This document shows, piece by piece, positions 40,030 to 61,887 of a stretch of DNA of 64,000 bases. The notes under the pieces were generated by a model. It was not told where the DNA came from, searched no databases, and saw only the letters and a list, made by a program, of their open reading frames with translations. Made by a program: the position numbers and the translations under genes. The DNA is taken from positions 1 to 64,000 of the IMG/VR virus record IMGVR_UViG_3300050120_000152. One strand, given 5' to 3'. The stretch's first letter is position 1, and every line of letters starts with the position of its first letter.

Positions 40030-40042
40030 CCAGAGAATTGTA

Positions 40043-40438: not shown

Positions 40439-40445
40439 TAAAATT

Positions 40446-41000: not shown

Positions 41001-41008
41001 GTAAAAAT

Positions 41009-41359
41009 ATGACAAAACGTAAAAGTATGCGCGGCAAAGATGTTGACGTTGGATTGATTCGCATGAAACAACAGTTAATGGATGGTAAGAAAACAGAGCC
41101 AAACATTAAACGGGAGGATTATGTGAGTGATCGTAGACGTAGATCATCATCTAAGAGAATTGATGAAATGTTTGCCAATGAACAAATCGTAAGACAAAAA
41201 TTAGTTGATCAAAAAAAGGTTGAAGGTCAGTCGCATGAAATTGTTACTGAAGTTATTGGTGTAACCGAAGCCGCTATTCTCGCAGAAATGGTTCCTGACG
41301 AAACATCTGAAAATGCTGCCAGCCCCAAAGGGCGTACCATCCATAAAAAACAGGGATAA
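41009..41359 (+). CDS. Hypothetical basic protein
   Basis: Coupled ORF. Confidence 0.65.
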   Translation: MTKRKSMRGKDVDVGLIRMKQQLMDGKKTEPNIKREDYVSDRRRRSSSKRIDEMFANEQIVRQKLVDQKKVEGQSHEIVTEVIGVTEAAILAEMVPDETSENAASPKGRTIHKKQG

Positions 41360-41361
41360 TT

Positions 41362-41697
41362 ATGATTGAAGTTTTTGACGAAATAACGAACTACAAGCCA
41401 TTACGTAAAGGTATAATTTTTCATTTCTTACAAGACGTAGAAAGTGGTACATTTAGTAATAAGACTGAATGGAATTTTCAAGTAAGAAACCGTAATGAAG
41501 ATATAAAAACACCACGTTGGGCTATTGTTGAACGTGTAGGTTCGGATGTACCGGCTCATGTCACAGAAGGTTCTTTTATTCTTATAGAGCAATTGATGTG
41601 GACAGAGGCATTCAAAGTTAATGAAGTGAAAAAGTGGTCAACCAATTTTGATAAGGTGTTGGCTACATCCACCTTGGAACCGACAGGATTATTTTAA
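41362..41697 (+). CDS. groES: Co-chaperonin GroES-like
   Basis: KPLRKGII...PRWAIVERVGSDV..V.EG..IL. Confidence 0.6.
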   Translation: MIEVFDEITNYKPLRKGIIFHFLQDVESGTFSNKTEWNFQVRNRNEDIKTPRWAIVERVGSDVPAHVTEGSFILIEQLMWTEAFKVNEVKKWSTNFDKVLATSTLEPTGLF

Positions 41698-44235: not shown

Positions 44236-46077
44236 ATGGCAAACAATTGTGCAGATGGCGTATATAATATTGATTATACGGACAACACTCTAAATCCTAT
44301 TGTAGTGAATAAACAAACATTGATTCAAAATGTGTTGGATATTACATTATTGGGTCAAGGCAGAAAAGAATATGGTGAAATATTTGATGAAAATATTTTA
44401 CATTTATTAGAAAATTTTTCATGTCCTGAAGACCCTATAAATCTCGGAAACCCCAATCTCACAAAAACTACATCTAATCTATTAGAGCATCCCACTAAAG
44501 GGCAGCTTTGGTATAACTCTACCACACTTAGATTATATGTATATAACGGTAGCAGCTGGTTTGCATTATCTACTTCCTCGGATATTGGAGGTAACAGCGG
44601 AATTATTGCTGACGGAATGCAATTACCTCGGCCAATATCACCAATAACTGGATATGAATTTCAATATTCTGAATGTAGTTGGATCGTTAGCCCATTCAAC
44701 TTTCCATCAGAAGTTGATTACATGGTATGTTATTCTGATACAACCTCATTAACTACATCACAATATCGATTATCATCATCTTCTAGTATAATCAGTGGAT
44801 ATGCATTTTATCAGATTATAGGTATAAAATATAATAATAATACTGGGAGTGATGTGCCTATTGTGCCACCACTGCCATCATCTACACCAAGAATGTCTTC
44901 TACACCAGCACCATCAGTATCACCTACCCCAACACCGATTGTTGGATCATCGGTAACGCCTACACCATCAATAACACCATCGTCTACTGTACCAGTTACA
45001 CCCACGACAACACCTACACCTACACTTAGCCCTACATCCACTCCAGCACCTTCTGCAACGCCTGCAACAAGCGTCCCTATCCTAAGAGGCACCCTATTCA
45101 TATCTCCTTCATTAGGATATCCGCAAGGCACTAATACAGCATTACCGTCCCCATGTTCAACGAACGCTACTACAGATGTTAATTGTCAATATACCATGTC
45201 TTTAATTGTTCAAGGATTATCAGGTGGAAGTCCTCCCTATTCAGTTGATTATTCGCATGTTAATTTCTCAGCATCTATTATCAATACATCAACATCAACA
45301 ACTGTACCATTCGCTTATTATTATGCTTATACAGGGGCATCTGGCGTAACTACATCGCCATTGAGAACAGGCGTAACATCAGCTAGTACATTGACAATGT
45401 CTGCACAATTTAATGAAGTCGGTGCACAAAATCAGGTTGGATGCGGTAATGGTAGCTGGTCGCAAGGAATAGTTGGTGGTAGTTATGTAACGATAACAGA
45501 TTCGGTTGGAAGAACTTTAAATTTGTACACTCCATCAGGTCTGAACGGTAACGTTTACGGAACATCTTATACTACACCACAATCAGCCTATATTGATAAT
45601 TATTTATCGGCCCCAGCATGTGGCGGTGGTGGCGGTGGTGGTGGCGGCTGCGTATCTATTAATTCGGTATTTCCTAACGGAAATATAGCAGAAACTGTAG
45701 AGTTAGATCATATGTTGGCTACATGCGATCCATATGATTTCTTTAATTGTGGCGATAACGCGGTCACATATGCCGCAACTAGATTACAACCTTGCGTGAG
45801 ACTTGTAACAGAATCTGGCGCATCATTAATATGCTCTACAACTGCTCCTATTCCAACATTAGAAAATGGATATATGTTAGCACCTACTTTGGCTAATCAA
45901 AGTGTTCCGGTAATGCGTACAAATATAACCAAGTGGGAAAATGTTGTATCCATTGAAGATGTTGGCGAATGTTTAGTGCGTCATATTACGGTAGGCGATA
46001 GATGCTTTTGGGCTGGTGAGACAACTGATGCCTTTATATTACATCATAACTTAAAAAAACCACCAAGCGACTTATAA
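44236..46077 (+). CDS. Virion (baseplate/fibre-type) protein: shared N-domain + Pro/Thr linker + beta domain + Gly9 + C-terminal Hint domain (45649-46050)
   Basis: YG....EN.LH.LENF..P..GQLWYN N-domain; GGG|CVSINS...FILHHN|LKKPPSDL. Confidence 0.8.
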   Translation: MANNCADGVYNIDYTDNTLNPIVVNKQTLIQNVLDITLLGQGRKEYGEIFDENILHLLENFSCPEDPINLGNPNLTKTTSNLLEHPTKGQLWYNSTTLRLYVYNGSSWFALSTSSDIGGNSGIIADGMQLPRPISPITGYEFQYSECSWIVSPFNFPSEVDYMVCYSDTTSLTTSQYRLSSSSSIISGYAFYQIIGIKYNNNTGSDVPIVPPLPSSTPRMSSTPAPSVSPTPTPIVGSSVTPTPSITPSSTVPVTPTTTPTPTLSPTSTPAPSATPATSVPILRGTLFISPSLGYPQGTNTALPSPCSTNATTDVNCQYTMSLIVQGLSGGSPPYSVDYSHVNFSASIINTSTSTTVPFAYYYAYTGASGVTTSPLRTGVTSASTLTMSAQFNEVGAQNQVGCGNGSWSQGIVGGSYVTITDSVGRTLNLYTPSGLNGNVYGTSYTTPQSAYIDNYLSAPACGGGGGGGGGCVSINSVFPNGNIAETVELDHMLATCDPYDFFNCGDNAVTYAATRLQPCVRLVTESGASLICSTTAPIPTLENGYMLAPTLANQSVPVMRTNITKWENVVSIEDVGECLVRHITVGDRCFWAGETTDAFILHHNLKKPPSDL

Positions 46078-46112: not shown

Positions 46113-47474
46113 ATGACTGACTATAGTGTAAAATATACTGACAAAACAAAACCGCCAATAACTATTCCAGAAGGAGTAGTTGATTCTTCATTGGATATCG
46201 TATTGTTTGGTAGAGTAGATTTGGAATACGGCCAACAATTAAACCAAGATATGCTTAATATTTTGGAACGATTTGCCTGCCCTCAAAATGCAGCATCTAC
46301 ACTAAGCAACACCTATCCAGACTATACCATTAATGGGAATGCTTTAACCCAGCCTACTCAAGGTCAATTATGGTTCAATTCTACCACACAAAAGTTGTTT
46401 GTATGGAATGGCACAAAATGGGAAACCATCAGAAACAAAGGAGATGTGGCGGGCAATTGGGGGCAATTATTAGATGGCAGTCAAATTCCCAGACCCGTAA
46501 ATCCTGTCAATGGATATGTTTATCCTTATAGCCAATGTATTTGGGCGGTTTCCCCAGCAGCATTACCCCAAGCGTTTACTTACATGGAATGCACTACTGA
46601 TACAAATGCAGTGGTAAGTATGAAATATAGAGCTTATGGCGATAGTGTACTTTCTTCAGGTATTGCAAACTATTTGATTATTGCTATTGCTGGCAATATT
46701 AATATGGGAACGATTTCAGTAACACCAGAAATACCATCAGTTTCAGGTACACCAACCCCAACCCCACCAACCTCTGTAACGCCATTAGTATCAATAACTC
46801 CTTCCCCTACACCAACCAGCACACCGGGAACATCTGCAGTACCATCACCAACCCCAGCAGCTTCTACGAGTAGTACCCCAGCAGCATCATTAACTGCTAC
46901 CCCAACCCCAACACTTACCCCAGCATCAACATTAACTCCAACTCCATCACCATTCGTGGATGCCTGTTCAAGATGTATCGCTGATGGGTTCCATTGTTGC
47001 GTTGCTGTAAACTCATTTTTGCCAGACGGAAGCATTGCTGGACATGTTCAAGTGGGAACTTCAATGTCTCTTGCTGACCCGGTGACCTTAGAACCATCTA
47101 CTGGAATAGTATCATATTCTGAACCAAGTTTACAAGAAAGTGTTAGGGTAGTTACCCAATCGGGAGCATCACTAAATTGTTCACTTACAGCACCATTACC
47201 GACTACAGAAGGATTATTATTAGCTCCTGATGTATTAGGTAAATTTGTAGCTATTATGATGAACGATATTGCATCTTGGGATGAAGTAATTTCAGTAGAA
47301 CCTATAGGCAAGATATGGGTACAACATATAACAGTTGGTGACAATTGTTTTTGGGCTGGCGACAGCTCTAATGCATTTATATTACATCATAATATCAAAT
47401 GCTGCTATTGCGATGGTCAAACTGACTGTTCTTGGGTTCCACCTAACTGTTGTGATGGAACGGATTGCTCGTAA
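46113..47474 (+). CDS. Paralogous virion protein with Hint domain (46998-47393) and Cys-rich 26-aa tail
   Basis: Same N-domain and PT linker; FHC|CVAVNS...FILHHN|IKCCYC...CCDGTDCS. Confidence 0.8.
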   Translation: MTDYSVKYTDKTKPPITIPEGVVDSSLDIVLFGRVDLEYGQQLNQDMLNILERFACPQNAASTLSNTYPDYTINGNALTQPTQGQLWFNSTTQKLFVWNGTKWETIRNKGDVAGNWGQLLDGSQIPRPVNPVNGYVYPYSQCIWAVSPAALPQAFTYMECTTDTNAVVSMKYRAYGDSVLSSGIANYLIIAIAGNINMGTISVTPEIPSVSGTPTPTPPTSVTPLVSITPSPTPTSTPGTSAVPSPTPAASTSSTPAASLTATPTPTLTPASTLTPTPSPFVDACSRCIADGFHCCVAVNSFLPDGSIAGHVQVGTSMSLADPVTLEPSTGIVSYSEPSLQESVRVVTQSGASLNCSLTAPLPTTEGLLLAPDVLGKFVAIMMNDIASWDEVISVEPIGKIWVQHITVGDNCFWAGDSSNAFILHHNIKCCYCDGQTDCSWVPPNCCDGTDCS

Positions 47475-47686: not shown

Positions 47687-47860
47687 ATGTTTCTTATTGT
47701 AAAACAAGATGATAGTGTAATCATAGGAAGTGCCATAAAACCTATAAATATTGGTGAGGCATCCAAAAATGGATACATCATCTGTGAAATACCTGATAAA
47801 GAATTTGACCCTAAAATGATAGGATCAAAAATAGAAGATTTTGACTACTGGAATGATTAA
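47687..47860 (+). CDS. 57-aa protein MFLIVKQDDS...DFDYWND (absent from the ORF track)
   Basis: GGAG RBS; TAATG coupling to gene 47860. Confidence 0.7.
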   Translation: MFLIVKQDDSVIIGSAIKPINIGEASKNGYIICEIPDKEFDPKMIGSKIEDFDYWND

Positions 47861-49146
47861 TGTCATATACAATAAATTTTACTGATAAACGTAAAACGCC
47901 AATCATTATTGATGATACGGATATTGACACATCTACTGATATTGCATTATTCGGTAGAAACCGCTTGACTTATGGCGAACAATTACAAGAAAATTTATTA
48001 CATATCTTAGAAAATTTTTCATGTCCAGAAGACCCTCTTTTTCCGGGTAATCCAGATTTATCCAAAGCATCGAATAATGCATTTCAACATATAACTATAG
48101 GGCAAGGTTGGTATAATTCGACCAATTCAACATTATATTATTATGATGGCACATACTGGATGCCATTAGCTGCTGAACAAAGTATCGCAGCAAATTGGGG
48201 AATCATTGCTGATGGACAGTATTTACCGAATCCAGTAAGTGCGATTACCGGACAAATATTTTCTTATGTTCATTGCGTTTATATTGTAAGCCCTCAAACA
48301 TTTCCACAAACTATTGATTATATGATATGTAAAGCAGATGCCAATGGTTTAGTTACTATGAAATATAGAATATCTGGTACTGATAGTATAATTGGTGGAG
48401 TAGCAAATTATTTGATTGTAGGTATTGCTGGCAATATTAATCAACCTGCTCCTACTGTTGCAGTAACACTTACTCCTACCCCTACACCTACGTCATCGTC
48501 GGGAACATCACATACACCAACACCAACTATTACCCCATCTACCACGCCAGTATCAACAACAACCCCAACACCAACACCAACAACATCAGTCGGTACATCG
48601 ATTACTCCTGTACCATCGGTAACACCAACACGTATTCCAATATCATCGGTAACGCCAACACCAACAACATCAGCAGCACCATTATCGCCATTAGCATTCC
48701 AAGGTCAATCTATTCATGCATTTACCGATGTACCGCCAAGATGTCCCGGTGTGGCAGGGGCGGCAACTATCCAATGTATATTCAATGCAGATGGAACATA
48801 TTCTATAAACACAACTTCCAATCAATTTGGACAAGACAGAACACCAAATCAATCTGGTATATGGTTACCTGCTGGATGGTCATCATCGGATACATCAATA
48901 AAATTTACCGATGTAGTTAATTTTATATCGGAAGCTAACCCAGCGTCAGTAACTAATTCTGCACCAGCATATCAACCATTAGCCGCAACACAATTATATA
49001 CATTATCTACTTCCGGTGGTTGTACCGCAGGTACAGGTATGGGATCAAATATTACACTGACAATTTCGCTTAAACGGATATCTACTGGCGTATTTTTTAA
49101 TACTACATGTACCTTAGATTGTGAATCATCTGATGCAGGTTTGTAA
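47860..49146 (+). CDS. Third paralogous virion protein (same N-domain + PT linker, different non-Hint C-domain)
   Basis: YTINFTD..LFGRNR..YGE.L.ENLLH.LENF; TPTP tract. Confidence 0.8.
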   Translation: MSYTINFTDKRKTPIIIDDTDIDTSTDIALFGRNRLTYGEQLQENLLHILENFSCPEDPLFPGNPDLSKASNNAFQHITIGQGWYNSTNSTLYYYDGTYWMPLAAEQSIAANWGIIADGQYLPNPVSAITGQIFSYVHCVYIVSPQTFPQTIDYMICKADANGLVTMKYRISGTDSIIGGVANYLIVGIAGNINQPAPTVAVTLTPTPTPTSSSGTSHTPTPTITPSTTPVSTTTPTPTPTTSVGTSITPVPSVTPTRIPISSVTPTPTTSAAPLSPLAFQGQSIHAFTDVPPRCPGVAGAATIQCIFNADGTYSINTTSNQFGQDRTPNQSGIWLPAGWSSSDTSIKFTDVVNFISEANPASVTNSAPAYQPLAATQLYTLSTSGGCTAGTGMGSNITLTISLKRISTGVFFNTTCTLDCESSDAGL

Positions 49147-49154
49147 TTTTATCT

Positions 49155-49808
49155 ATGATCAAAAAGATCAAAAATTTAAAATTATCTATCACTCCTGAAC
49201 AAGTAAAAAACGAATGGAATGAGGTAAAATCGGTACGAAACCGTTTATTACAAAATAGTGATTGGATATTTACCCCTGATAATAATTTAGAAGAATCTAT
49301 TGTATTGTTGTGGACGGCTTGGCGAAAAAATATTAGACGCGTTGATGAATTTACTGAAATTGATAAAGCATTACAGTTTTTACAAGATTTGCAGGATAAT
49401 TCGCCGCCGATAAAATATAAAAATAATAATTATCATTCATTAGAATCTTATAAACAAGGATTAGTAAAATTGGTTAGCAGTATTATGAAAGATACTCTTG
49501 ATTCTATCCACGTATCCATAGATTGTCGAGAAATAGTAATGGAGAAATTTGAAGAAGCTGAAAAATTTCTCGCTGGTAATATAGAAAATACCATGTTGAT
49601 AGACCTTGAGGCCGCACATTTAAGCAAATCACAACTTGAGGTTGCAGAACAATTTATTAAAGAACGGCACAATTATTTTCTAAAAATAGTAACGATTGAA
49701 ACAGTTAAAAACAAATTTTTAACTCGTATAGAAAATGTTGAAACTATTCAGCAATGTGATACTATACGCGACGACTTACAAGTTTTAGGAACCAAAATAT
49801 GGATATAG
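49155..49808 (+). CDS. Tail fibre assembly chaperone-like protein
   Basis: W..V...RN.LL..SDW....D......W..WR..IR motif; follows the fibre-like genes. Confidence 0.65.
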   Translation: MIKKIKNLKLSITPEQVKNEWNEVKSVRNRLLQNSDWIFTPDNNLEESIVLLWTAWRKNIRRVDEFTEIDKALQFLQDLQDNSPPIKYKNNNYHSLESYKQGLVKLVSSIMKDTLDSIHVSIDCREIVMEKFEEAEKFLAGNIENTMLIDLEAAHLSKSQLEVAEQFIKERHNYFLKIVTIETVKNKFLTRIENVETIQQCDTIRDDLQVLGTKIWI

Positions 49809-50371
49809 ATATTGATGTACCTTCAAAATTCGATGCAATGAAAACCTTTACGGGAAAAGTGGTGCGTGCATCTCGTATAGAAAATGAGACAATACTTAAG
49901 CATAATGTAGGTGTATATTTTCAAAATATACCCACTGATCTAATAACAGGATTAGCTGCTATACCTTATGACAAATCCGAAGAATATGGATATTTCAAGA
50001 TGGATATCATTGCCAATTCAGCAATAGATGATTTTGAATCGAAAGCATGGATGGATGAATATATTGAAATAGAACCTAATTGGAACCTATTGCTTGAACG
50101 TGAGAATGTGGAAAAATTGTTTCACCTATCCAAACAATTTGACGTTGTATATGCGGTAAAACCCAAATCTATATTAGAAATTGCAGACATTCTAGCTCTG
50201 ATTCGTAAAAATAAAATAAAACTATTAGATAAATATTTACAGAATAAAAAAGCTATCCGCAAGGAACTTTATACTCATCGTGAAGGTGCTGATATGAGAA
50301 AACCGCATGCATTAGCATATGCTCTTATTATTGTGCTACAACTACATTTAATAGAAATGGGAAAATTATAA
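49799..50371 (+). CDS. DNA polymerase III alpha-like fragment B (catalytic palm)
   Basis: MDIDID (DnaE PDxDxD), KHNVGVYF (HAAGVVI), YGYFKMDII (GLVKFDFL). Confidence 0.8.
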   Translation: MDIDIDVPSKFDAMKTFTGKVVRASRIENETILKHNVGVYFQNIPTDLITGLAAIPYDKSEEYGYFKMDIIANSAIDDFESKAWMDEYIEIEPNWNLLLERENVEKLFHLSKQFDVVYAVKPKSILEIADILALIRKNKIKLLDKYLQNKKAIRKELYTHREGADMRKPHALAYALIIVLQLHLIEMGKL

Positions 50372-50730
50372 TGACTATGTTACAATCCATATTAGAAGCT
50401 ATGTTACCAAATTTAACAGATAACCAGAAAGGATTGTTGATTTCTATTCATGCTTCAGCAACACCACAACAAGCCTTTGATACGGCCAATGGCACAATGA
50501 TGTCAATATCAGCTAAAGATCAAATGGTAAATATGGGATTAATAAGACAATTGGGAAATCAATTACAGTTGACTGATGCGGGAAACGAATCATTATTATC
50601 TAATAATTTAATAGATAACCTAGGTACGATTACACCGGAAGGCGATATTCAATTGAAACATTTTGAAAATAATAAATCGGAACAAGTCAATACAGAATCA
50701 TTTGACTTGTTCAAATCGTTCTATCAATAA
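50371..50730 (+). CDS. Hypothetical protein (MLQSILE N-terminus)
   Basis: TAATG coupling. Confidence 0.65.
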   Translation: MTMLQSILEAMLPNLTDNQKGLLISIHASATPQQAFDTANGTMMSISAKDQMVNMGLIRQLGNQLQLTDAGNESLLSNNLIDNLGTITPEGDIQLKHFENNKSEQVNTESFDLFKSFYQ

Positions 50731-51207: not shown

Positions 51208-52521
51208 TCATGCCGGACAGGTTCCCCATACAGGCCGCGATAATACCCACGATGTTGCAGATAAATCAAAGTTACTGGGCACTGACGGGATCAATGTGAC
51301 GCACCAATGAGATAAATCTTGATTAAATGCATAAGCACTATAAAACATATAAGACATATCTGTTACCTTACTAGTATTCCATGAACCAATATCTTGATTA
51401 AATGCCGAAGCACTTTGAAACATTTGACTCATAGCTGTTACATTACTAGTATTCCATGATCCAATATTGCCATTAAAAGAAGAAGCATTAACAAACATAG
51501 CAGACATATCAGTTACATTACTGGTATCCCATGAACCAATATTGCCATTAAATGCTGTAGCATTATTAAACATACTACTCATAGTAGTTACATGACTGGT
51601 ATTCCATGATGATAAATCTTGGTTGAATACTAGAGTATTCTGGAACATAAAACTCATATCAGTTACATTACTGGTATTCCATGAGGATATGTCTCGATTA
51701 AACAATAATGTGCCACCTAACATTATACTCATATTAGTTACATTACTGGTATCCCATGAGGATATATCTTGATTGAATGTTTTAGCATCAGCAAACATAA
51801 AACTCAAATTAGTTAATGTTGTTGGGATAAAATTGGGCACAAAAGTAATATCTTGTGGAAGATTTATATTTGTTATGTTATAAGTCCCCCATGTTGTAAC
51901 AACCGTTGATGATCCACCCAGATCACCAACGGCTAAATAAAAAAATACTCCTGCAGTAATAGTGCCATTATTAATATAATCACCATAAACCTTAATAGTA
52001 TAATCACCAACGGTATCATATTGATGTGTTATTCCATTAACACAAGCATCATCACTTCCATCTGATGCACCATTTGGGATTGGAGTGATAGTTCCGTCAC
52101 CCCAATCAATAGAAGCATTATTGGATGCTCCACATGCATAGAATTCATAACCAAAAGCATTAGTTACATTCAGGGTGAATGGAGTTAGTCCACCTATTGA
52201 TGGTGTTGGAGTTGGCGTAGGAGGAATTGCTCCAACATCAAACAACATCAAAAATACTTCTCCCATTGTAGGATTAGTAAAAGTTATTGTTATTGTATTA
52301 ATATCATTGACCACAATAGAGGCTGGATATATTTTCTGACCGTCAGACACAACTGTTATTACAAATTTGTTAGTGTTTTGTCCATGATTAAGTACCCACA
52401 CATATGACGGAGTTGATTGCACGCAATGAAATTGAGCCATACCATCTTGAATAACTCTATCAGTATAAAATTCCTGACCAGTGACTAGATCAATATAAAT
52501 GGCATTGTAAGATTGTGACAT
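51208..52521 (-). CDS. Virion adhesin-like protein: N-domain + PT linker + PKD-like + DUF285/BspA repeats
   Basis: Start MSQSYN 24 nt after minus-strand TATAAATA (52545-52552); FN.[DN]I.SW[DN]TS.VT.MS.MF repeats; C-terminus WCVT..P..F...W...PVWGTCP shared with 22722. Confidence 0.8.
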   Translation of the reverse strand: MSQSYNAIYIDLVTGQEFYTDRVIQDGMAQFHCVQSTPSYVWVLNHGQNTNKFVITVVSDGQKIYPASIVVNDINTITITFTNPTMGEVFLMLFDVGAIPPTPTPTPSIGGLTPFTLNVTNAFGYEFYACGASNNASIDWGDGTITPIPNGASDGSDDACVNGITHQYDTVGDYTIKVYGDYINNGTITAGVFFYLAVGDLGGSSTVVTTWGTYNITNINLPQDITFVPNFIPTTLTNLSFMFADAKTFNQDISSWDTSNVTNMSIMLGGTLLFNRDISSWNTSNVTDMSFMFQNTLVFNQDLSSWNTSHVTTMSSMFNNATAFNGNIGSWDTSNVTDMSAMFVNASSFNGNIGSWNTSNVTAMSQMFQSASAFNQDIGSWNTSKVTDMSYMFYSAYAFNQDLSHWCVTLIPSVPSNFDLSATSWVLSRPVWGTCPA

Positions 52522-52603
52522 TAGGCAAATCCGATATTCCCTATTATTTATAGTCAGTGATCCAAGGAAGATAAATACAATAAAGTTAACGAGTTTACTA
52601 AGC

Positions 52604-53377
52604 ATGTCTATCAGAATTGTCAATAAGACTAATGGCCGTACCATTATTATCAAGAATCAAAATGATATGAATCATTTAGATTCATCTGTGTCATCCATTG
52701 ATGACGATGATAATGCATTCAGATTGATGCCAAGAAATACTGACACTGACGATGCAGACAAGAATGATCCCTATTCCGAACCATCTTCATACCATACAAT
52801 GGGTCAATCGACCGATCTTATTAATAATATGCGTTACAAGAAAAGTGGGTTTTCAAACGCTATGTTTGATGTTAACTCCTTTGATGATGATAAATCCAAG
52901 CATTATATTAAGACTACTGAATATCCCTTGGCTGATGAGATAAAAAGTTGGTTCAATCCAATGACTGTTGATGCGCCTATCACTCGATTAAAGACTACTG
53001 ACATTCCAGATGATCAAATATCAGATACCCAACAAACTTCAGATTTATTCGGACAGAGTGATGGAGATGATAATAATGAATTATCAGATGATACTAAACA
53101 ATCTGACACAGAGAATACCGATTTTCAAGGATTGATTCGTACCATTCGTGGTGCATGTTTAGTTTTCAAACGTAAATCACAAAATGGTACTTTTGATGAA
53201 TTATGGATTTATAATGTTGGTGATAATCTAAAGCAAGAAACCATTGTCAGAAAAGCTATCTTAGCAGGTACTGATATTGATCCCAACACACAAATGTCAG
53301 ATGATGGTACACAGAAAGCAAAAACTCACACTATTGGAAATATACAATTCTTAAATATTTCTGGCCTTGTTCAATAA
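52604..53377 (+). CDS. Acidic hypothetical protein (probably late/virion)
   Basis: 257-aa ORF; GATAAATA upstream. Confidence 0.65.
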   Translation: MSIRIVNKTNGRTIIIKNQNDMNHLDSSVSSIDDDDNAFRLMPRNTDTDDADKNDPYSEPSSYHTMGQSTDLINNMRYKKSGFSNAMFDVNSFDDDKSKHYIKTTEYPLADEIKSWFNPMTVDAPITRLKTTDIPDDQISDTQQTSDLFGQSDGDDNNELSDDTKQSDTENTDFQGLIRTIRGACLVFKRKSQNGTFDELWIYNVGDNLKQETIVRKAILAGTDIDPNTQMSDDGTQKAKTHTIGNIQFLNISGLVQ

Positions 53378-53431: not shown

Positions 53432-53680
53432 ATGCCCCGCAAAGAAACTTCCGTAAAAGATGTTCTTATCAGTGATTTTAAAGAATTGTCTACACAAGCT
53501 GTCGATCTTAAAACTAAAATTAATGAATCCAAAACTTCATTAAAGAAAGAGTATTTTAATAAAAAATTGAAAAAAATTAATAAAAAAGTTTATTCAGTGA
53601 TGATCGAACTGGCGGTGTTGGAAGCTAAATCAAAACCAAAAATTACTACAATTGAGGAAGCTACTAATGACCAAGTTTAA
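53432..53680 (+). CDS. Hypothetical coiled-coil protein
   Basis: First gene after the promoter. Confidence 0.65.
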   Translation: MPRKETSVKDVLISDFKELSTQAVDLKTKINESKTSLKKEYFNKKLKKINKKVYSVMIELAVLEAKSKPKITTIEEATNDQV

Positions 53681-54239
53681 TAAAGTATTAGCCATTCATT
53701 GTCATACGACGGGTATGGATTATGGCTCAGATGTTACGCTAAATAATCAAGCATTGACAGTAGCATTGGGCGTTGTAGATATGGAATCTATGAAAATGAC
53801 TGATACTAAGGCGGTAAAAATAAAATTCGATGGTTCTAAGTATGTATGGAATTCAAAATTAGAATCTATTCATGGTATATCTAAACAAGAAGCGGTTGAA
53901 GATGGCGAAACGTTATCCGATGCAGCATCCATCTTAGGAGAATTCTTGTATGAGCATTTTGGTATTAAGGATGCCATTCCATTATTAGGATATAATCCTA
54001 CATCGTTCCACTTACCATTTTTAAATAAAATTCTGTTATCCGAAGATTTGGCATTCAAATTTGACAATAGAAGTATAGATTTGTTCTCTCTCATGGCTAT
54101 TTTACAAAAATATACGGTCAAGGAAATGTTTGAAGTATTTGAAGTGGATCAATCTATCCCATTATCATCATTGACCATTATCAAAACTTATTTGAAAATT
54201 TTTAATACAATAAAGCATATCATTAAAGAGGTTATCTAA
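53667..54239 (+). CDS. DEDD (DnaQ/epsilon-like) exonuclease fold with catalytic Asp/Glu replaced by His
   Basis: AIHCHTTG (cf. DxETTG), IHGIS, GYN..FHLPFL (cf. HN..FD..F), IDL. Confidence 0.7.
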   Translation: MTKFNKVLAIHCHTTGMDYGSDVTLNNQALTVALGVVDMESMKMTDTKAVKIKFDGSKYVWNSKLESIHGISKQEAVEDGETLSDAASILGEFLYEHFGIKDAIPLLGYNPTSFHLPFLNKILLSEDLAFKFDNRSIDLFSLMAILQKYTVKEMFEVFEVDQSIPLSSLTIIKTYLKIFNTIKHIIKEVI

Positions 54240-54546: not shown

Positions 54547-54924
54547 ATGACCGTAATACAAACCTATCTAATCTATGCGTTAGCTGCACTTTTGGCTATC
54601 TCAATAGGTATTAACATAATTTATCATTTTGATAGAGCATCTTTAATTGCTGCTAATACATCATTGACCACGACGGCTAAACGCCTAACCGAACAGGTAA
54701 AATTGGATACTAAAACTATTCTAAGTCAAAATGATGCAATCAATAAAGCGGCATCAAAATCCAAAGATAATGACAGACGAATAAGTGATTTGGGTACAAA
54801 ATTAGCTGCACAGACAGTTACTAATCAGGCATTGATCGATAAATTAAATAATCAACCAGCCCCAAAAACATGTGATGACGCCGTGATTTATTTGAAAAAT
54901 AATTTGGGTATATTCCAATGGTAA
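54547..54924 (+). CDS. Inner-membrane spanin (Rz-like)
   Basis: N-terminal TM + coiled coil, overlapping a lipoprotein gene. Confidence 0.7.
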   Translation: MTVIQTYLIYALAALLAISIGINIIYHFDRASLIAANTSLTTTAKRLTEQVKLDTKTILSQNDAINKAASKSKDNDRRISDLGTKLAAQTVTNQALIDKLNNQPAPKTCDDAVIYLKNNLGIFQW

Positions 54925-55361
54925 AATATATTTTAGCAGCTCTAATATTCGCCTCGTTGATCGGTTGTGTATCACAGCCCGTAAAAACAGTTTATCAAGA
55001 GAAAGATATTCCGATCTATATTGTTCCTGCGCCGCCTATAGTCAAGCAACCCGTGTTGGCTATTACCTCATTGACCCCAGCACAACAGAACAACATTGGA
55101 GAGCTTACTAAGGCTTATAATATTTCATTGAAGCAGACCATGCAGTATGCGTGCCAGTTAAAGAATATTGTGGATGAATATACAATATTGGCCGCAAGCA
55201 GCCCATCATTGATATCTCCGGTACCATTACCAGTAGCTATGTCATTTTCTCTATCAACCCCAAGCATTTCACAAATATTATCAGTAATTAAACCTAATAC
55301 TCCGTTAACCGCCACCGTTCCAACGATAACACCTAATGTAGCGAAAGATTGTAATAAATGA
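54918..55361 (+). CDS. Outer-membrane lipoprotein spanin (Rz1-like)
   Basis: Lipobox SLIG|C, Pro-rich. Confidence 0.7.
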   Translation: MVKYILAALIFASLIGCVSQPVKTVYQEKDIPIYIVPAPPIVKQPVLAITSLTPAQQNNIGELTKAYNISLKQTMQYACQLKNIVDEYTILAASSPSLISPVPLPVAMSFSLSTPSISQILSVIKPNTPLTATVPTITPNVAKDCNK

Positions 55362-55699
55362 AAAAATTGACTCAAATTCTCTCCGAACAAAAAGAACAAA
55401 AAGAAAAAGAAAAGAAGTTGAGATTTGTTGAAACCAATCCTCAAGAAGCATTTCCCAATGATACAATTTCTTATTTACAAAAAGAAATTAATAAATTAGC
55501 CAAAGATTTAAGTGTAGATTGGAAGAGTCCAATTGAATTAGTCAATGCCGCTTTTTATAATCTTGAAGTTCCTATTCCTAAAGCATTCTTGGCAAAACGC
55601 TGGCAACAATATAACACATTATTTGGTGTAGCCATCAAAAGTTTGTTTGATGCTCGCGGATTTGGTGCAGATTGGTCAAATTCTTCCGCTCACAAATAA
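55358..55699 (+). CDS. Hypothetical protein (KKLTQILSE N-terminus)
   Basis: ATGA overlap. Confidence 0.65.
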   Translation: MKKLTQILSEQKEQKEKEKKLRFVETNPQEAFPNDTISYLQKEINKLAKDLSVDWKSPIELVNAAFYNLEVPIPKAFLAKRWQQYNTLFGVAIKSLFDARGFGADWSNSSAHK

Positions 55700-55722
55700 A
55701 TATAATAAATGGATACAGAATC

Positions 55723-56580
55723 ATGGATTTAAATAGATTAAGAGTATTAGCAGGATTAGACCCAATTGCTGAAAGTATTGAGCTTAATGAAGCGGAAAAC
55801 ATTAAAAAGGGTGCTTTCCATAAATGGTTAGGCAAGCCTGAAGATGAAGCTATTACAGATGCTGATGTTGATCGCGGCTTAAAGTCTGATGATGAACATG
55901 TCAGAAAAATGGCACAATTCGCCAAGAATATGAGAGAATCAGTAAACGAAGTCGAAGAACCTAAAGTACATGAATTATCATTTAAGTGTCCAGAATGCTC
56001 ACATGCATGGTCAATACATGCAAAAGTTGAACGCGACGACGAATGCCCTAAATGTGGTAAAGTATCACTACCTAAAAAGAATGTAAATGAAGTGTCAGCC
56101 GCAAAGCTTGCACATAGAACTCATGGAGATAATCCTGCTTCTGAAGCGGCACACGATTCGGATATCCCAAAAGTAACATTTATGGAAAAGCCACCAGCCA
56201 ATGCATTAATTTTAACTCAGGTTGAATTTGATGATGACACATTGAATTTCAATAAAACTAAAATGGGTGTCGATGTTGAGGAAGAAACCAAGGTCAAAGT
56301 TCCTTCAGATGTTATGAAACATATTAATAAGAGAATTCAAGAGCTTAAAGCTTCTATTGAAACTTATGATGAAAAGGGTTACGATGATAAGAGTGTCAAG
56401 AGTAGAGCTATTGAATGCTTAGAAAAAATTAAAAAACATTTGGAAGCGGGTACTCAAGAACAATATAAGCAGGCTCAAGTATACTATGGTACATTAATGA
56501 GTCCTATATTCGATATGTTCCCTACACAATTAATTAATTTTCTACACTCAACCAGCGCTCACACAAAATCTAAAATTTAA
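55723..56580 (+). CDS. Candidate internal head protein with Zn ribbon
   Basis: MDLNRLRVLAGL..IAESIELNE; CPEC...CPKC. Confidence 0.6.
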   Translation: MDLNRLRVLAGLDPIAESIELNEAENIKKGAFHKWLGKPEDEAITDADVDRGLKSDDEHVRKMAQFAKNMRESVNEVEEPKVHELSFKCPECSHAWSIHAKVERDDECPKCGKVSLPKKNVNEVSAAKLAHRTHGDNPASEAAHDSDIPKVTFMEKPPANALILTQVEFDDDTLNFNKTKMGVDVEEETKVKVPSDVMKHINKRIQELKASIETYDEKGYDDKSVKSRAIECLEKIKKHLEAGTQEQYKQAQVYYGTLMSPIFDMFPTQLINFLHSTSAHTKSKI

Positions 56581-57568: not shown

Positions 57569-58267
57569 ATGAATTTTAAATTAATGGCAGAGCATAACCA
57601 ACGTATGCTTAAGACGTATACTCGCGATAAAGGTTATGTCAATCTTCGCGTAGCACAATTAGATTCAAATGGGAAAATATTGAATGTGTTTAAGAATCGG
57701 TATTCTGCATCACGTTATGTTATTGAAACTAAAATGTCTAATTATTTGAGTCCGAAAGGATTAGGGTTTACTCGCGCAGCCATTGCCGGAACTCTTACGA
57801 ATTGTATGATGAATACTGCATATGCCTATGGATATTATTGGAAGATTCTCTCGCCATACGATTCAAGTTTGGTCGTGACTAAAAAATATAAAAACGATTC
57901 AACTTATAAAAACAATAAAATATCCGATACTAAACGCTGGATCGTGATAGATAAAACTAAAGAAATAGAATTTAACTCATTAAAATCTATTTCTAAAACA
58001 TACAATATTGGTATTCGTACAGTCACACGTATGGCTAAAACTAACGAAACAATAAATGCTCTATCACTTATCAAGAAAAATATATTTCCTACAGAGAAGA
58101 CTTTTGATAGTTTTAGCCATATGCAACGATTCTTTAGAATTAGTAGAGAGACTGCCAAAAAAATTATTGATAATAAATTAATAATCCGTACATATATCCC
58201 AATTATACCTTCCGATAAATTAATAAAAAATTATGAAAAAACTAACTGCTTAAGGAAATTAGCATGA
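57569..58267 (+). CDS. NUMOD1-like DNA-binding repeat protein (homing-endonuclease remnant or regulator; start uncertain)
   Basis: VAQLDSNGKILNVF.N..SASR..AYGYYWK; further F.S...I repeats; no nuclease motif seen. Confidence 0.55.
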   Translation: MNFKLMAEHNQRMLKTYTRDKGYVNLRVAQLDSNGKILNVFKNRYSASRYVIETKMSNYLSPKGLGFTRAAIAGTLTNCMMNTAYAYGYYWKILSPYDSSLVVTKKYKNDSTYKNNKISDTKRWIVIDKTKEIEFNSLKSISKTYNIGIRTVTRMAKTNETINALSLIKKNIFPTEKTFDSFSHMQRFFRISRETAKKIIDNKLIIRTYIPIIPSDKLIKNYEKTNCLRKLA

Positions 58268-58794
58268 CACCAAATCTGTCCCAACACGGCATTACCGTAA
58301 AAAATGGTTTTGGATTTTTTTGGGGTGGTGTGCTATCTAATTGGTACAAATGTAACTTCATTGCTGAATCTGTTAAATATACATCTACCGAGCAGCATAT
58401 GATGTATAATAAAGCAGTATTGTTTAATGATCTACACATTGCTGGAAAGATATTAAAAACATCCAATACCAAAGAAATTAAAGCATTAGGTCGTAAAGTT
58501 AGAAATTTTGATCAGAAAGTTTGGGATCAGATGCATACCTTTATTGTCCTAGAAGGTAATTACGAGAAATTCATTCAAAATGAAAACCTTGCAGATATTT
58601 TGGTTGCTACCGAAGGGCTTGAATTAGTTGAGGCATCTCCATATGATAAAATTTGGGGTGTAGGTCTAGCAGTCGATCATCCAGATATCATTCATAAAGA
58701 TAAATGGCGTGGTACTAACCTATTAGGTAAAGTTTTAACTGATGTTAGAGCAGAAATAATTACTACAAGATCATTTAATGGATTGACAAGATGA
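58264..58794 (+). CDS. NADAR (YbiA/DUF1768) family protein
   Basis: FFWGG.LSNWY, TEQ.MM..KA.LF.D, KALGRKV.NFD, EASPYDKIWG.G, G.NLLG. Confidence 0.93.
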   Translation: MTPNLSQHGITVKNGFGFFWGGVLSNWYKCNFIAESVKYTSTEQHMMYNKAVLFNDLHIAGKILKTSNTKEIKALGRKVRNFDQKVWDQMHTFIVLEGNYEKFIQNENLADILVATEGLELVEASPYDKIWGVGLAVDHPDIIHKDKWRGTNLLGKVLTDVRAEIITTRSFNGLTR

Positions 58795-59002: not shown

Positions 59003-59521
59003 ATGATAATTACATTAGATTCAATAAAATTAGATAATAATTTTATACCATCTGAAACATATGATGGCAGAGTTCTATTGTTTCTTGATTTTGATGGTGT
59101 TCTTCATGCTTATGAACAAGGATATAAGCGAGATAAAGACAAAATTTTTATTCGTAACCATTTCATCGAAGATATTCTTCGAAAAATGCCTAATGTAGAA
59201 GTGGTAATATCCTCCAACTGGTCAAAGACATGTTCGTTAAATATCCTGAAAAATAAATTTTCAGAAGACGTGAGGCATCGCTTTATTGGTCATTTACGTA
59301 AACATACCACAAGTCGCTCCGATGATGTGCGAACCTATATGGAAACTCATGGTGAAGTAGATGTGCCATGGGTTGCTGTAGATGATCTAGCATATTTCCA
59401 TGATACCGATCCAGTAATTCGTACATCGTATAAGACAGGACTGATGGAAGACTCTTGTAAAGCCCTTGAAAATGCGTTATCATCACCTATTGAATATAAA
59501 AAATATAAAGAAACTATATGA
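59003..59521 (+). CDS. HAD-family phosphatase (RNA-repair 'Swiss army knife' type)
   Basis: LFLDFDGVL, VVISSNW, WVAVDD. Confidence 0.8.
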   Translation: MIITLDSIKLDNNFIPSETYDGRVLLFLDFDGVLHAYEQGYKRDKDKIFIRNHFIEDILRKMPNVEVVISSNWSKTCSLNILKNKFSEDVRHRFIGHLRKHTTSRSDDVRTYMETHGEVDVPWVAVDDLAYFHDTDPVIRTSYKTGLMEDSCKALENALSSPIEYKKYKETI

Positions 59522-60765: not shown

Positions 60766-61887
60766 ATGAATAACAAAACAGAACGATTTCCCTATATTTG
60801 GAGCTTGTTTATCCTAAGAGGTCAAGGTTTTCACCTTGGTCACCTTCATAACATAAATGAAGCATTAAAAATTTCCAAATTTCTTATTATCTTACTCGGA
60901 AGCCATAACAAAGCAATTGACTTTGATGATCCGTGGACGGTTGAACAACGCCGTGAAATGATCGAAGCTTCTTTAACAGAAGACCAAAAAACCCGTATTT
61001 ATTTTCAATACATTGAAGACCGACTTTATTCTAATAGTACATGGATTGCCATGGCTCAAGAAAAAGTTGATTCTATTTTACTTCAATATAGCCGATATCG
61101 TTTAAATGCTATTGATAAAAACAAGCAGGTCAAAATGTGCATTATCGGCCATTCCAAGGATGAATCAAGTTGGTATCTTAAAGCATTTCCACATTTGGAT
61201 TTGGTTGAATTACCAAAATTCAATATTTTTGAATCAGATGGCCCCATAAATGCTACAGACATTCGTCATTACATTTACGAAAATAAATTTGGACATGCTA
61301 AAGCATTAATGCCCTCTGGAACCTATAATTGGATTATTAAAAACTGGATCAACACACCAGATGCCAAATATGTTAAAGATTGGTATGATTTTGAAATGAA
61401 ATACGAAGAACCATATTTAACTCAACCATATGCCGTAAATTTTTATACAGCAGATGCTGTAGTTATTCACAGTGGTCATGTTTTATTAGGACGCCGTAAA
61501 AATTTTCCGGGCAAAGATTATTGGGCAATTATTGGTGGGCATGTTAATGCTAATGAAACAGCACAAGAAGCTTCTGTTCGTGAATTATATGAAGAAACTA
61601 AAATTAGAATTTCTCCATTAGAATTGCAAAAGTGTCTTAAATTTGAAAAACTTTTTGACCATCCAAAGCGTTCAAAACGATGCTGTATGAGAACAAAAAA
61701 AGGTAGAACCATTTCTATGACCTATTGCTATGTTCTAGATAATGAGCTACAATTGCCTTATATTGAAGCTGATGATGATATCGCTGAAGTCAAATGGGTT
61801 CCATTCTCAGATATTAAAAATATGCGAAATGTTCTATTTGAAGATCATGCAGATATTTTGGATTATTGTATCAACCATATTAATTAA
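60766..61887 (+). CDS. nadM: Bifunctional NMN adenylyltransferase / ADP-ribose pyrophosphatase (NadM-Nudix)
   Basis: R.Q.FHLGH, GSHN, INATDIR, Nudix box GGHVNANETAQEASVRELYEET, FEDH. Confidence 0.92.
   Translation: MNNKTERFPYIWSLFILRGQGFHLGHLHNINEALKISKFLIILLGSHNKAIDFDDPWTVEQRREMIEASLTEDQKTRIYFQYIEDRLYSNSTWIAMAQEKVDSILLQYSRYRLNAIDKNKQVKMCIIGHSKDESSWYLKAFPHLDLVELPKFNIFESDGPINATDIRHYIYENKFGHAKALMPSGTYNWIIKNWINTPDAKYVKDWYDFEMKYEEPYLTQPYAVNFYTADAVVIHSGHVLLGRRKNFPGKDYWAIIGGHVNANETAQEASVRELYEETKIRISPLELQKCLKFEKLFDHPKRSKRCCMRTKKGRTISMTYCYVLDNELQLPYIEADDDIAEVKWVPFSDIKNMRNVLFEDHADILDYCINHIN

What the first reader, a model, noticed from the sequence alone, without database searches (positions are those of the whole stretch)
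53667..54239. DnaQ-like exonuclease fold with acidic catalytic residues changed to histidine
Seen: ExoI reads AI-H-C-H-TTG (His codons 53697, 53703) for DxETTG; ExoII reads YNPTSF-H-LPFL (54009) for HNxxFD; ExoIII HxAxxD is not recognisable. Scaffold motifs (IHGIS, IDL) remain. Three acidic-to-His changes look selected rather than random decay. Inference: a pseudo-nuclease or a re-metallated (Zn/Fe/Ni His-triad) protein, possibly a nucleotide or oligonucleotide sensor or sponge, or an epsilon mimic acting with the DnaE fragments.
Basis: partly seen in the sequence, partly recalled or inferred. Interest (0 to 1): 0.6.

Follow-up and report, generated by a model that had tools for sequence, protein, structure and literature searches.

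The report
Phage exonuclease fold with histidine triad
A giant phage from peat carries a small protein with the fold of a DNA/RNA-trimming exonuclease. Its three metal-binding acidic residues have all been changed to histidines, and evolution has kept those histidines, so the old active site has been rebuilt, not simply lost.

Summary
Window 53667-54239 (+) encodes a 190-aa protein. Its AlphaFold model (pLDDT 90) matches Orn, Pol III epsilon, ExoI and RNase T.

It sits at the same conserved genome position as the intact stand-alone DEDDh exonuclease ("Pol III epsilon") of the jumbo phages XacN1, Xoo-sp13, RAS14 and RsoM2USA. All five catalytic residues are replaced: D→H11, E→H13, D→H115, H→L166, D→I171.

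The three His are invariant in 17 cluster representatives, down to about 28% identity. Their codons alternate CAT/CAC, and dN/dS is about 0.05-0.17. A single origin is not rejected (p-AU 0.97). The residues that hold the terminal nucleotide in epsilon are kept.

A second set of 17 relatives lost the catalytic residues differently: (H/S)E(T/A/S/V)xK.

The window's phage, and one related phage with the same three histidines, carry an extra intact Orn-like DEDDh gene. The four cultured phages with an intact enzyme do not.

My best reading is a rebuilt His3 centre, probably binding one transition metal, that still meets a nucleotide phosphate. Whether it hydrolyses or only binds is untested.

The "epsilon mimic" idea is not supported: the protein has no C-terminal tail and the genome has no PHP domain. 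This is a new variant of a known kind, known so far only from metagenomes.

The parts
53667..54239 (+). Gene for the 190-aa DEDDh-fold protein with the His triad (P0001), stop codon included
   Evidence: ORF list and translation. AlphaFold model pLDDT 90.3, pTM 0.87. Foldseek matches to Orn, epsilon 2gui (TMq 0.71, rmsd 2.8), ExoI and RNase T. It is 31-33% identical to the intact DEDDh gene at the same position in XacN1-group phages.
53654..53659 (+). Shine-Dalgarno-like GAGGAA, 7 nt before the ATG
   Evidence: Read directly from the sequence.
53697..53699 (+). Codon of His11, at the position of the first ExoI Asp (epsilon D12)
   Evidence: H in 17/17 His-triad members and D in 107/107 DEDHD members. 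CAT/CAC alternate among homologues.
53703..53705 (+). Codon of His13, at the position of the ExoI Glu (epsilon E14)
   Evidence: H in 17/17 against E in 107/107. CAT/CAC alternate.
53706..53714 (+). Thr14-Thr15-Gly16, the retained ExoI scaffold (epsilon T15, G17)
   Evidence: T14 and G16 are shared by the His-triad and DEDHD groups. Epsilon T15 and G17 contact the terminal nucleotide (bioRxiv 10.64898/2026.06.29.735100).
53868..53876 (+). Ile68-His69-Gly70, the retained IHG motif
   Evidence: H69 and G70 are shared by all groups. I take I68 to correspond to epsilon V65, a contact of the terminal nucleotide. That mapping rests on motif alignment, not on a structural superposition.
53991..54011 (+). 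ExoII stretch Tyr109-Asn110-...-Phe114-His115. His115 (54009-54011) replaces the ExoII Asp (epsilon D103).
   Evidence: H115 in 17/17 against D in 107/107. N110 and F114 are shared. Y109 is specific to the His-triad group, where active members have H. CAC/CAT alternate.
54162..54179 (+). Remnant of ExoIII: Leu166 (where the general-base His was) to Ile171 (where the last Asp was), with Ser168 specific to the His-triad group
   Evidence: Position 166 is L/M/I/C/S and position 171 is variable (I/T/N/S/L/F/H). S168 is present in 16/17, against A in active members.
53432..53680 (+). Upstream 82-aa basic helical ORF (pI 9.6), overlapping the start of P0001 by 14 nt. It stands where XacN1-group phages have a dNMP kinase.
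   Evidence: A short ORF overlaps the gene start in 7 of 8 related loci and ends 1 nt before it in L012. It has a conserved Lys-rich core. A physical link to P0001 is not shown (one search gave no verdict).

Best explanation
P0001 is the descendant, at the same genome position, of a stand-alone phage DEDDh 3'-5' exonuclease. Its two-Mg carboxylate centre has been replaced in place by a conserved three-histidine centre: H11 and H13 on strand beta-1, and H115 at the start of helix alpha-4. The general-base His and the last Asp of ExoIII were given up to hydrophobic residues.

The pocket that holds the 3'-terminal nucleotide in epsilon is kept (T14, G16, I68-H69-G70, N110, F114). A set of further polar residues became fixed together with the triad (Y109, D133, S168, Y175, K177).

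I infer that the protein still docks a nucleotide or a nucleic-acid 3' end. It would meet the phosphate through a His3 centre that most likely holds one transition-metal ion (Zn-type: three His plus water). Classical two-metal DEDDh chemistry is lost. Ordinary 3'-5' exonuclease or oligoribonuclease work in this phage lineage is probably done by a separately acquired, intact Orn-like DEDDh gene.

Shown:
- fold, same-position descent from the intact enzyme, and all five replacements;
- purifying selection on the three His;
- retention of the pocket residues;
- the extra Orn-like gene.

Inferred:
- that the three His converge in space, by homology with epsilon D12/E14/D103;
- metal binding and the nature of the ligand;
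- whether it hydrolyses (I lean slightly to yes, a one-metal hydrolase) or only binds.
For: **Fold.** AlphaFold pLDDT 90.3. Foldseek against the PDB and against BFVD gives only DEDDh proteins at the top. The ESM Atlas neighbours are viral RNase_T clusters.

**Same-position descent.** Window 44-62 kb is collinear with XacN1, Xoo-sp13 and RAS14. Neighbouring genes are 45-60% identical, P0001 only 31-33%. The same gene order holds in L010, L013-L015 and L019-L021.

**Replacements and their conservation.** Pattern HHH in 17 representatives, DEDHD in 107. The Cys between the two His is not kept in P0015 or P0060, so the signature is HxH...H.

**Selection.** Synonymous CAT/CAC turnover at all three His. 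dN/dS is about 0.05-0.17 with dS saturated.

**Single origin.** The constrained tree is better by 63.6 lnL, p-AU 0.969.

**Pocket.** T14, G16, H69, G70, N110 and F114 are as conserved in the His-triad group as in active members. P105, Y109, P117, D133, L139, S168, Y175 and K177 are specific to the His-triad group. The epsilon contacts T13, T15, G17, V65, F102, H98 and H162 are listed in bioRxiv 10.64898/2026.06.29.735100. D12, E14, D103 and D167 coordinate the two Mn ions in epsilon (PMC4408791).

**Displacement.** The window's genome and G001 (the phage of P0011) each carry an intact Orn-like RNase_T gene, 58% identical to each other. XacN1, Xoo-sp13, RsoM2USA and RAS14 have only the gene at the conserved position.

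**Neighbouring kinase.** A P-loop kinase-like gene still sits just upstream of two early-branching His-triad members, P0017 and P0060. That fits a product that is still a nucleotide.
Against: - No coordinates were available, so the convergence of the three His on one point was not measured.
- No metal or ligand prediction could be run.
- The general-base His and the fourth Asp are lost to hydrophobic, partly variable residues.
- A related set of 17 relatives, (H/S)E(T/A/S/V)xK, cannot hold metals the classical way, yet the one member examined (P0054, L021) lies in the same slot. The job of this gene position may therefore not need catalysis at all, and the His triad could be a plug or a phosphate clamp.
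- The Orn-like co-occurrence rests on 2 genomes with the His triad against 4 without.
- Pfam does not recognise P0001, and a profile built from His-triad members alone finds no solved structure.
Confidence: 0.5

Rival explanations
1. Pure pseudo-nuclease. The protein is a non-catalytic, metal-free binder or scaffold. The three His only fill and stabilise the emptied metal pocket, or clamp a phosphate directly, and the useful property is binding a 3' end, an oligonucleotide or a partner protein. Metazoan MAEL works this way.
For: - The general base and the fourth acid are lost and partly variable.
- The second set of 17 relatives, with an E...K pair, suggests the metal site was filled by a salt bridge. 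The one member examined (P0054, L021) lies in the same slot.
- Precedent: the MAEL domain lost DEDD, is inactive and binds ssRNA (PMC4408791).
- An intact Orn-like enzyme is present in the genome.
Against: - Invariance of all three His down to about 28% identity, with co-fixed Tyr, Asp and Ser, is tighter than the pattern at the other two former catalytic positions and than in the other set of relatives that lost the catalytic residues.
- Three His with no fourth protein ligand is the usual make-up of catalytic, not structural, Zn sites (general knowledge).
Confidence: 0.3
2. Anti-defence sponge or sensor. The retained dinucleotide-sized pocket sequesters, or reports on, cyclic or linear signalling oligonucleotides of host immune systems.
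For: - Pocket residues are retained.
- Orn-type DEDDh pockets fit dinucleotides (PMC11706625 abstract).
- The region also carries NAD-salvage genes: NadM-Nudix, NAMPT and NADAR.
Against: - The same neighbourhood, including the NAD genes, exists in phages whose gene is an intact exonuclease, so the context does not point to a sponge.
- No PADLOC or other defence link was found or tested.
Confidence: 0.1
3. Epsilon mimic. A dead proofreading subunit that docks on the phage's DnaE-like pieces or on the replisome.
For: - Cultured relatives are annotated "Pol III epsilon".
- DnaE-like matches lie in ORF 40377-41000 (PF07733) and ORF 49799-50371 (phrog_11778, weak finger match).
Against: - At 190 aa it is the exonuclease domain only, without an alpha-binding or clamp-binding tail.
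- No PHP domain in the genome.
- The phage has a family-B polymerase, a clamp loader, UvsW and a RecA-like protein, a T4-type set.
- This does not explain why three His are fixed.
Confidence: 0.05
4. Decaying pseudogene, or a chance resemblance of motifs.
For: Pfam finds nothing.
Against: - Intact ORF in every relative.
- dN/dS far below 1.
- 17 conserved representatives.
- Confident DEDDh model.
Confidence: 0.01

Closest known systems
Stand-alone DEDDh exonuclease of XacN1-group jumbo phages (XacN1 ORF223, Xoo-sp13 gp213, RAS14 WAX21735, RsoM2USA gp458; annotated "DNA polymerase III epsilon subunit")
   Same: Same slot in a collinear gene block, same length (about 190-200 aa), same fold, 25-33% identity, and shared scaffold motifs TxG, IHG, GxN..F and xD.
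   Different: Those proteins keep DxE, D and Hx4D and reach the Pfam RNase_T threshold. P0001 has HxH, H and L...I and is invisible to Pfam. In XacN1, Xoo-sp13 and RAS14 the upstream gene is a dNMP kinase (in RsoM2USA a P-loop kinase-like ORF without a DNMK match); here it is an 82-aa basic ORF, and no DNMK match exists in the genome.
E. coli Pol III epsilon (DnaQ), catalytic domain epsilon186 (PDB 1J53, 2GUI)
   Same: Fold (TMq 0.71, rmsd 2.8 A over 188 columns). Equivalents of the terminal-nucleotide contacts T15, G17, V65, N99 and F102 are kept.
   Different: All five catalytic residues are replaced. There is no C-terminal alpha-binding segment, and no PHP-bearing DnaE partner in the genome.
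MAEL domain of metazoan Maelstrom (DnaQ-H fold, "active site switch")
   Same: A DEDDh-fold domain that lost the DEDD residues under selection and gained conserved His/Cys residues. The metazoan protein is inactive and binds ssRNA (PMC2628886; PMC4408791).
   Different: The Zn of MAEL is bound by an ECHC set at a different, structural site, and the old DEDD pocket is filled by an Asn/Arg hydrogen-bond network. Here the new His residues sit exactly on three of the old metal-ligand positions. P0001 has a single Cys and no ECHC motif. No homology beyond the superfamily.
Related phage proteins with the pattern (H/S)E(T/A/S/V)xK in the same family (for example P0054, P0075, P0139)
   Same: Same protein family. 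P0054, the one member whose locus was examined (L021), lies in the same genome slot with a kinase-like gene upstream. The first Asp is also often His. Known only from metagenomes.
   Different: These keep the ExoI Glu, have a small residue at ExoII and a Lys at the last Asp position, which looks like a salt-bridge plug and not a triad. One joint origin with the His-triad group is neither shown nor rejected (p-AU 0.26).
His3-metal nuclease centres such as the HNH motif of colicin E7
   Same: Three His holding one Zn-type ion that contacts a phosphate. ColE7 is mentioned as a His-rich Zn site in PMC2628886; the details are from my general knowledge.
   Different: Unrelated fold (beta-beta-alpha-Me). 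This is a resemblance of chemistry only, untested for P0001.

Membership tests
DEDDh / DnaQ-like 3'-5' exonuclease superfamily (Pfam RNase_T PF00929) | RNase H-like alpha/beta fold with DnaQ topology | tested here: met
   AlphaFold pLDDT 90.3. Top Foldseek hits are Orn, epsilon, ExoI, RNase T and TREX. In BFVD the top hit has TM 0.92.
DEDDh / DnaQ-like 3'-5' exonuclease superfamily (Pfam RNase_T PF00929) | Detectable sequence homology to bona fide members | tested here: met
   tblastn E 3e-23 to the Xoo-sp13 enzyme. In the profile search, 107 of the aligned hits keep DEDHD. PHROG 192, E 5e-6.
DEDDh / DnaQ-like 3'-5' exonuclease superfamily (Pfam RNase_T PF00929) | Score above the Pfam gathering threshold | tested here: not met
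   No Pfam family even at E 10. The genome scan with PF00929 finds only the Orn-like gene.
DEDDh / DnaQ-like 3'-5' exonuclease superfamily (Pfam RNase_T PF00929) | ExoI motif DxE | tested here: not met
   H11-C-H13.
DEDDh / DnaQ-like 3'-5' exonuclease superfamily (Pfam RNase_T PF00929) | ExoII Asp | tested here: not met
   H115.
DEDDh / DnaQ-like 3'-5' exonuclease superfamily (Pfam RNase_T PF00929) | ExoIII Hx4D (general base and fourth acid) | tested here: not met
   L166 and I171.
DEDDh / DnaQ-like 3'-5' exonuclease superfamily (Pfam RNase_T PF00929) | Mg/Mn-dependent 3'-5' exonuclease activity | not testable with these tools
   Needs a biochemical assay.
Pol III epsilon subunit proper (DnaQ) | C-terminal segment that binds the PHP domain of alpha, and a clamp-binding motif | tested here: not met
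   The protein ends at residue 190 with the last helix of the domain (H168-189). There is no extra segment.
Pol III epsilon subunit proper (DnaQ) | A PHP-bearing DnaE/PolC partner in the same genome | tested here: not met
   PF02811 gives no match in the complete 340-kb genome. There are only short DnaE-like pieces and a family-B polymerase.
MAEL-type DEDD-fold domain that lost its catalytic residues | ECHC zinc-binding set | tested here: not met
   P0001 has one Cys and no Pfam MAEL match. This is an analogy only.
HIT (histidine triad) nucleotide hydrolases | HxHxHxx motif on the HIT fold | tested here: not met
   Only HxH is contiguous; the third His is 102 residues away. The fold is DEDDh.

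The most novel reading that the evidence does not exclude
The His triad is a new catalytic centre built in place on a DEDDh scaffold. It could be a mononuclear His3-metal (Zn/Fe/Ni/Co) phosphodiesterase. It could instead be a metal-independent His acid-base ribonuclease that leaves cyclic-phosphate ends. Either way its substrate or product would differ from the ancestral enzyme. This would be the first case of a DEDD exonuclease changing its catalytic chemistry at the very same residue positions.
Probability: 0.3. Interest if true: 0.8.

Novelty: new variant of a known kind. Interest (0 to 1): 0.6.

Why it matters
DEDD exonucleases are among the best-studied two-metal enzymes, and their four acidic residues are treated as defining. 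Known derivatives that lost them either scatter the site (S. cerevisiae Pop2, from memory) or build a zinc site elsewhere (MAEL).

Here a natural group of relatives swaps three of the ligands for histidine at the same positions, keeps them under strong selection and keeps the nucleotide pocket. The active ancestor-type gene survives at the same position in cultured phages (XacN1, Xoo-sp13, RAS14, RsoM2USA).

That gives a clean natural experiment on how a metal centre can be rewritten. It offers a candidate new metal or ligand chemistry on an RNase H-like scaffold. It also gives a direct comparison (DEDHD against HHH against HE..K within one gene position) that can be tested with a handful of recombinant proteins.

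It also warns annotators: "Pol III epsilon subunit" is a poor name for this phage family, and Pfam misses the histidine forms altogether.

Tried and rejected
- **Complex with the upstream ORF.** Complex prediction of P0001 with the overlapping 82-aa upstream ORF gave no verdict (ipSAE 0.01). This is no evidence either way.
- **Joint loss of kinase and catalysis.** I considered that the neighbouring dNMP kinase and the catalytic residues were lost together as one salvage pathway. Rejected: the genome has no DNMK match, but the His-triad members P0017 and P0060, and the HE..K member P0054, still have a P-loop kinase-like gene upstream.
- **The 82-aa ORF as a kinase remnant.** No similarity was found.
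- **First scan of viral contigs.** With P0001 alone it found nothing. The alignment query found two IMG/VR fragments.
- **Sequence searches against solved structures.** P0001 alone, and a profile of His-triad members only, gave only chance-level hits.
- **One origin for all relatives that lost the catalytic residues.** The treekit run did not finish after 1150 s. A faster LG+G4 AU test does not reject one origin (p 0.26), so the number of inactivation events stays open.
- **Sequencing runs.** Only peat-metagenome DNA contigs hold the stretch, one of them the probable source. There is no RNA run, and laying the contigs showed no variants. Expression is untested.
- **Literature.** Searches for a DEDD exonuclease with His at the catalytic positions, or for phage pseudo-exonucleases, found no precedent beyond MAEL.

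Full report
**What is there.** Window 53667-54239 (+) is an ORF of 190 codons (P0001), preceded by GAGGAA at 53654-53659.
- LAI-H11-C-H13-TTG (53697, 53703);
- GYNPTSF-H115-LPF (54009);
- IHGIS and IDL;
- no recognisable Hx4D.

Pfam finds nothing even at E 10. PHROGs gives a weak match to phrog_192, "DNA polymerase exonuclease subunit" (E 5e-6). A sequence search of solved structures finds nothing.

**Origin of the sequence.** The window is the first 64 kb of a complete 340,344-bp virus record with direct terminal repeats. G+C is about 33%. The stretch is held by peat-metagenome runs. It is an uncultured jumbo phage.

**Fold.** An AlphaFold model built on 13 homologues has mean pLDDT 90.3 and pTM 0.87. 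Its strand and helix order is that of a DnaQ-like domain. H11 and H13 lie on strand 6-14, H115 lies at the start of helix 111-124, and the former ExoIII lies at the start of helix 168-189.

Foldseek against the PDB returns only DEDDh enzymes at the top: oligoribonucleases, epsilon (2GUI, TMq 0.71, rmsd 2.8 A), exonuclease I, RNase T and TREX. BFVD and the ESM Atlas agree.

**Same-position descent from an active enzyme.** tblastn against 50,697 phage records finds five hits, all in jumbo phages: Xoo-sp13, XacN1, CM1, RAS14 and RsoM2USA. Identity is 29-33%. Two are annotated "DNA polymerase III epsilon subunit".

These proteins keep IDCETSG, GHNxxSFD and HNALED, and the two scanned (Xoo-sp13, RsoM2USA) pass the Pfam RNase_T threshold. 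Window 44-62 kb is collinear with their loci, gene by gene. The neighbours are 45-60% identical, but P0001 is only 31-33% identical.

P0001 is thus the gene at the same position as an intact exonuclease, and it has evolved faster than its surroundings. The alignment fixes the replacements: D→H11, E→H13, D→H115, general-base H→L166 and last D→I171.

**Conservation of the histidines.** The word-index search gave 12 metagenomic relatives at 41-78% identity, all with HCH and SFH.

The exhaustive profile search gave 182 proteins at E ≤ 0.001. Among 159 aligned representatives:

| Pattern at the five catalytic positions | Representatives |
|---|---|
| DEDHD (intact) | 107 |
| HHH + two non-catalytic residues | 17 |
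| (H/S/A)E(T/S/A/V/G)xK-like | 17 |

- The 17 with HHH include P0014, P0015, P0017 and P0060, at about 28-43% identity to P0001.
- The Cys between the two His is not universal: it is T in P0015 and L in P0060. The signature is therefore HxH...H.
- In nine homologous DNAs each His codon alternates CAT/CAC.
- Nei-Gojobori estimates give pN 0.12-0.25 with pS 0.66-0.94 (saturated), so omega is roughly 0.05-0.17.
- On a quick maximum-likelihood tree 16 of the 17 form one group. The tree with all 17 held together has a higher likelihood than the free tree (by 63.6 lnL, p-AU 0.969).

The changes are selected, and a single origin is not rejected.

**What else is kept or changed.** Positions shared at equal strength by active and His-triad members include T14, G16, Q28, W61, H69, G70, G108, N110, F114, F118 and D138.

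In epsilon the terminal nucleotide contacts T13, T15, G17, V65, F102 and H162. The penultimate nucleotide contacts H98, F102, L145 and H162 (bioRxiv 10.64898/2026.06.29.735100). By motif alignment these correspond to P0001 C12, T14, G16, I68, F114, L166 and Y109. Apart from the lost His, the nucleotide pocket is under the same constraint as in active enzymes.

Residues fixed only in the His-triad group are P105, Y109, P117, D133, L139, S168, Y175 and K177. Several are polar, and S168 and Y175 lie on the helix that used to carry Hx4D. Position 171 is free to vary, and position 166 is merely hydrophobic.

This pattern looks like a rebuilt site, not an abandoned one.

**Genomic setting.**
- In XacN1, Xoo-sp13 and RAS14 the upstream gene is a dNMP kinase (PF21448).
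- In RsoM2USA, and in the loci of P0017, P0060 and P0054, the upstream gene is a P-loop kinase-like ORF; in those three loci it matches AAA_28 weakly.
- In the window's subgroup it is a 62-114-aa Lys-rich helical ORF that overlaps or abuts the start of the gene.
- The window's genome has no DNMK match.
- Loss of the kinase is therefore not tied to the His triad.

The complete genome has a 918-aa family-B polymerase, a clamp-loader subunit, UvsW and a RecA-like protein. It has no family-A polymerase and no PHP domain. The only DnaE-like matches are short ones in small ORFs.

It also has a second, intact RNase_T-family gene resembling oligoribonuclease, at genome position 312,679-313,266. A 58%-identical copy of that gene is present in the IMG/VR fragment that carries P0011. 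XacN1, Xoo-sp13, RsoM2USA and RAS14 have no RNase_T match other than the gene at the conserved position.

The numbers are small (2 against 4). They do fit a displacement scenario, in which an acquired Orn-like enzyme supplies ordinary exonuclease activity and the old gene is free to change function.

**Mechanism.** In epsilon, D12, E14, D103 and D167 coordinate the two metal ions (PMC4408791). His residues at the first three of these positions should, by homology, point at the same spot.

Three His without a fourth fixed protein ligand is the typical make-up of a catalytic Zn-type site with a water (general knowledge). With the nucleotide pocket retained, I consider a His3 centre that meets the phosphate of a nucleotide or a 3' end the best-supported reading (confidence 0.5).

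Whether it hydrolyses or merely binds is open. In favour of catalysis:
- the absolute invariance of the triad;
- the co-fixed Tyr, Asp and Ser;
- the kinase-like neighbour kept by early-branching members.

In favour of mere binding:
- the loss of the general base;
- the related HE..K set of relatives;
- the MAEL precedent.

**Comparison with what is known.** The closest relatives are the XacN1-type enzymes (see the membership table). Under its defining features this is a member of the DEDDh superfamily by fold and descent, but it fails every catalytic-motif criterion. It should not be called an exonuclease or an epsilon subunit.

The closest conceptual precedent is the MAEL domain. It has a DnaQ-H fold, lost DEDD, has a structural Zn bound by ECHC at another place, is inactive and binds ssRNA (PMC2628886, PMC4408791). 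The difference is that here the new residues occupy the old ligand positions themselves.

I found no report of such a variant. No cultured phage in the collection carries either form that lost the catalytic residues.

**Verdict.** This is a new variant of a known kind. Interest is 0.6.

Noticed in passing
window 54547-54924 and 54918-55361 (+): Probable spanin pair shortly downstream of the gene. The first is a 125-aa protein with an N-terminal membrane helix and a weak Rz-like match (phrog_739, E 3e-4). The second is a 147-aa protein that overlaps it by 7 nt and has a lipoprotein signal ending in LIGC.
   Followed up: partly
window 39541-41697 and 49155-50730 (+): DnaE-like matches sit in small ORFs. 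ORF 40377-41000 matches only positions 14-93 of PF07733. ORF 49799-50371 matches phrog_11778 "DNA polymerase" (E 7e-59) and weakly matches the Pol III finger. Strings of small ORFs flank both, and XacN1, Xoo-sp13 and RAS14 have the same small ORFs for the 49155-50730 block. A DnaE-like gene conserved in pieces would be worth its own study.
   Followed up: partly
genome G000 312,679-313,266 (outside the window; L005:1486-2073): Intact oligoribonuclease-like DEDDh gene (RNase_T, 63 bits). It is also present in the related phage fragment G001 (58% identity) but absent from XacN1, Xoo-sp13, RsoM2USA and RAS14.
   Followed up: yes
window 58264-58794, 59003-59521, 60766-61887, 62169-63593 (+): NAD-related gene set: NADAR, an HAD domain of the "Swiss Army Knife" RNA-repair proteins, NadM-type adenylyltransferase fused to Nudix, and NAMPT. 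An adenylyltransferase-Nudix gene is also present at this place in XacN1, Xoo-sp13 and RAS14, and XacN1 has the NADAR (DUF1768) gene too.
   Followed up: partly
window 51208-52653 (-): A 481-aa DUF285-repeat protein on the opposite strand lies in a slot between conserved genes. Relatives hold quite different large proteins there (Laminin_G_3 1243 aa, F5/F8 type C 1229 aa, DUF285 270 aa). It looks like a swappable host-recognition cassette.
   Followed up: no
window 44236-46077, 46113-47474, 47860-49146 (+): Three tandem paralogues, each about 42-52% identical to a single gene of about 530 aa in Xoo-sp13 and RAS14. No Pfam match for the one scanned (44236-46077).
   Followed up: no
metagenome proteins P0038, P0045, P0046, P0051, P0054, P0074, P0075, P0082, P0092-P0095, P0098, P0118, P0131, P0139, P0158 (locus L021 for P0054): A second set of relatives in the same phage exonuclease family that lost the catalytic residues, with the pattern (H/S/A)E(T/S/A/V/G)xK. 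The conserved Glu and Lys suggest a salt bridge filling the old metal site.
   Followed up: partly
window 55672-56580 (+): A 302-aa protein with a CxxC...CxxC zinc-ribbon (weak Pfam Zn_ribbon_8 and HypA matches), conserved at the same position in the XacN1 group.
   Followed up: no
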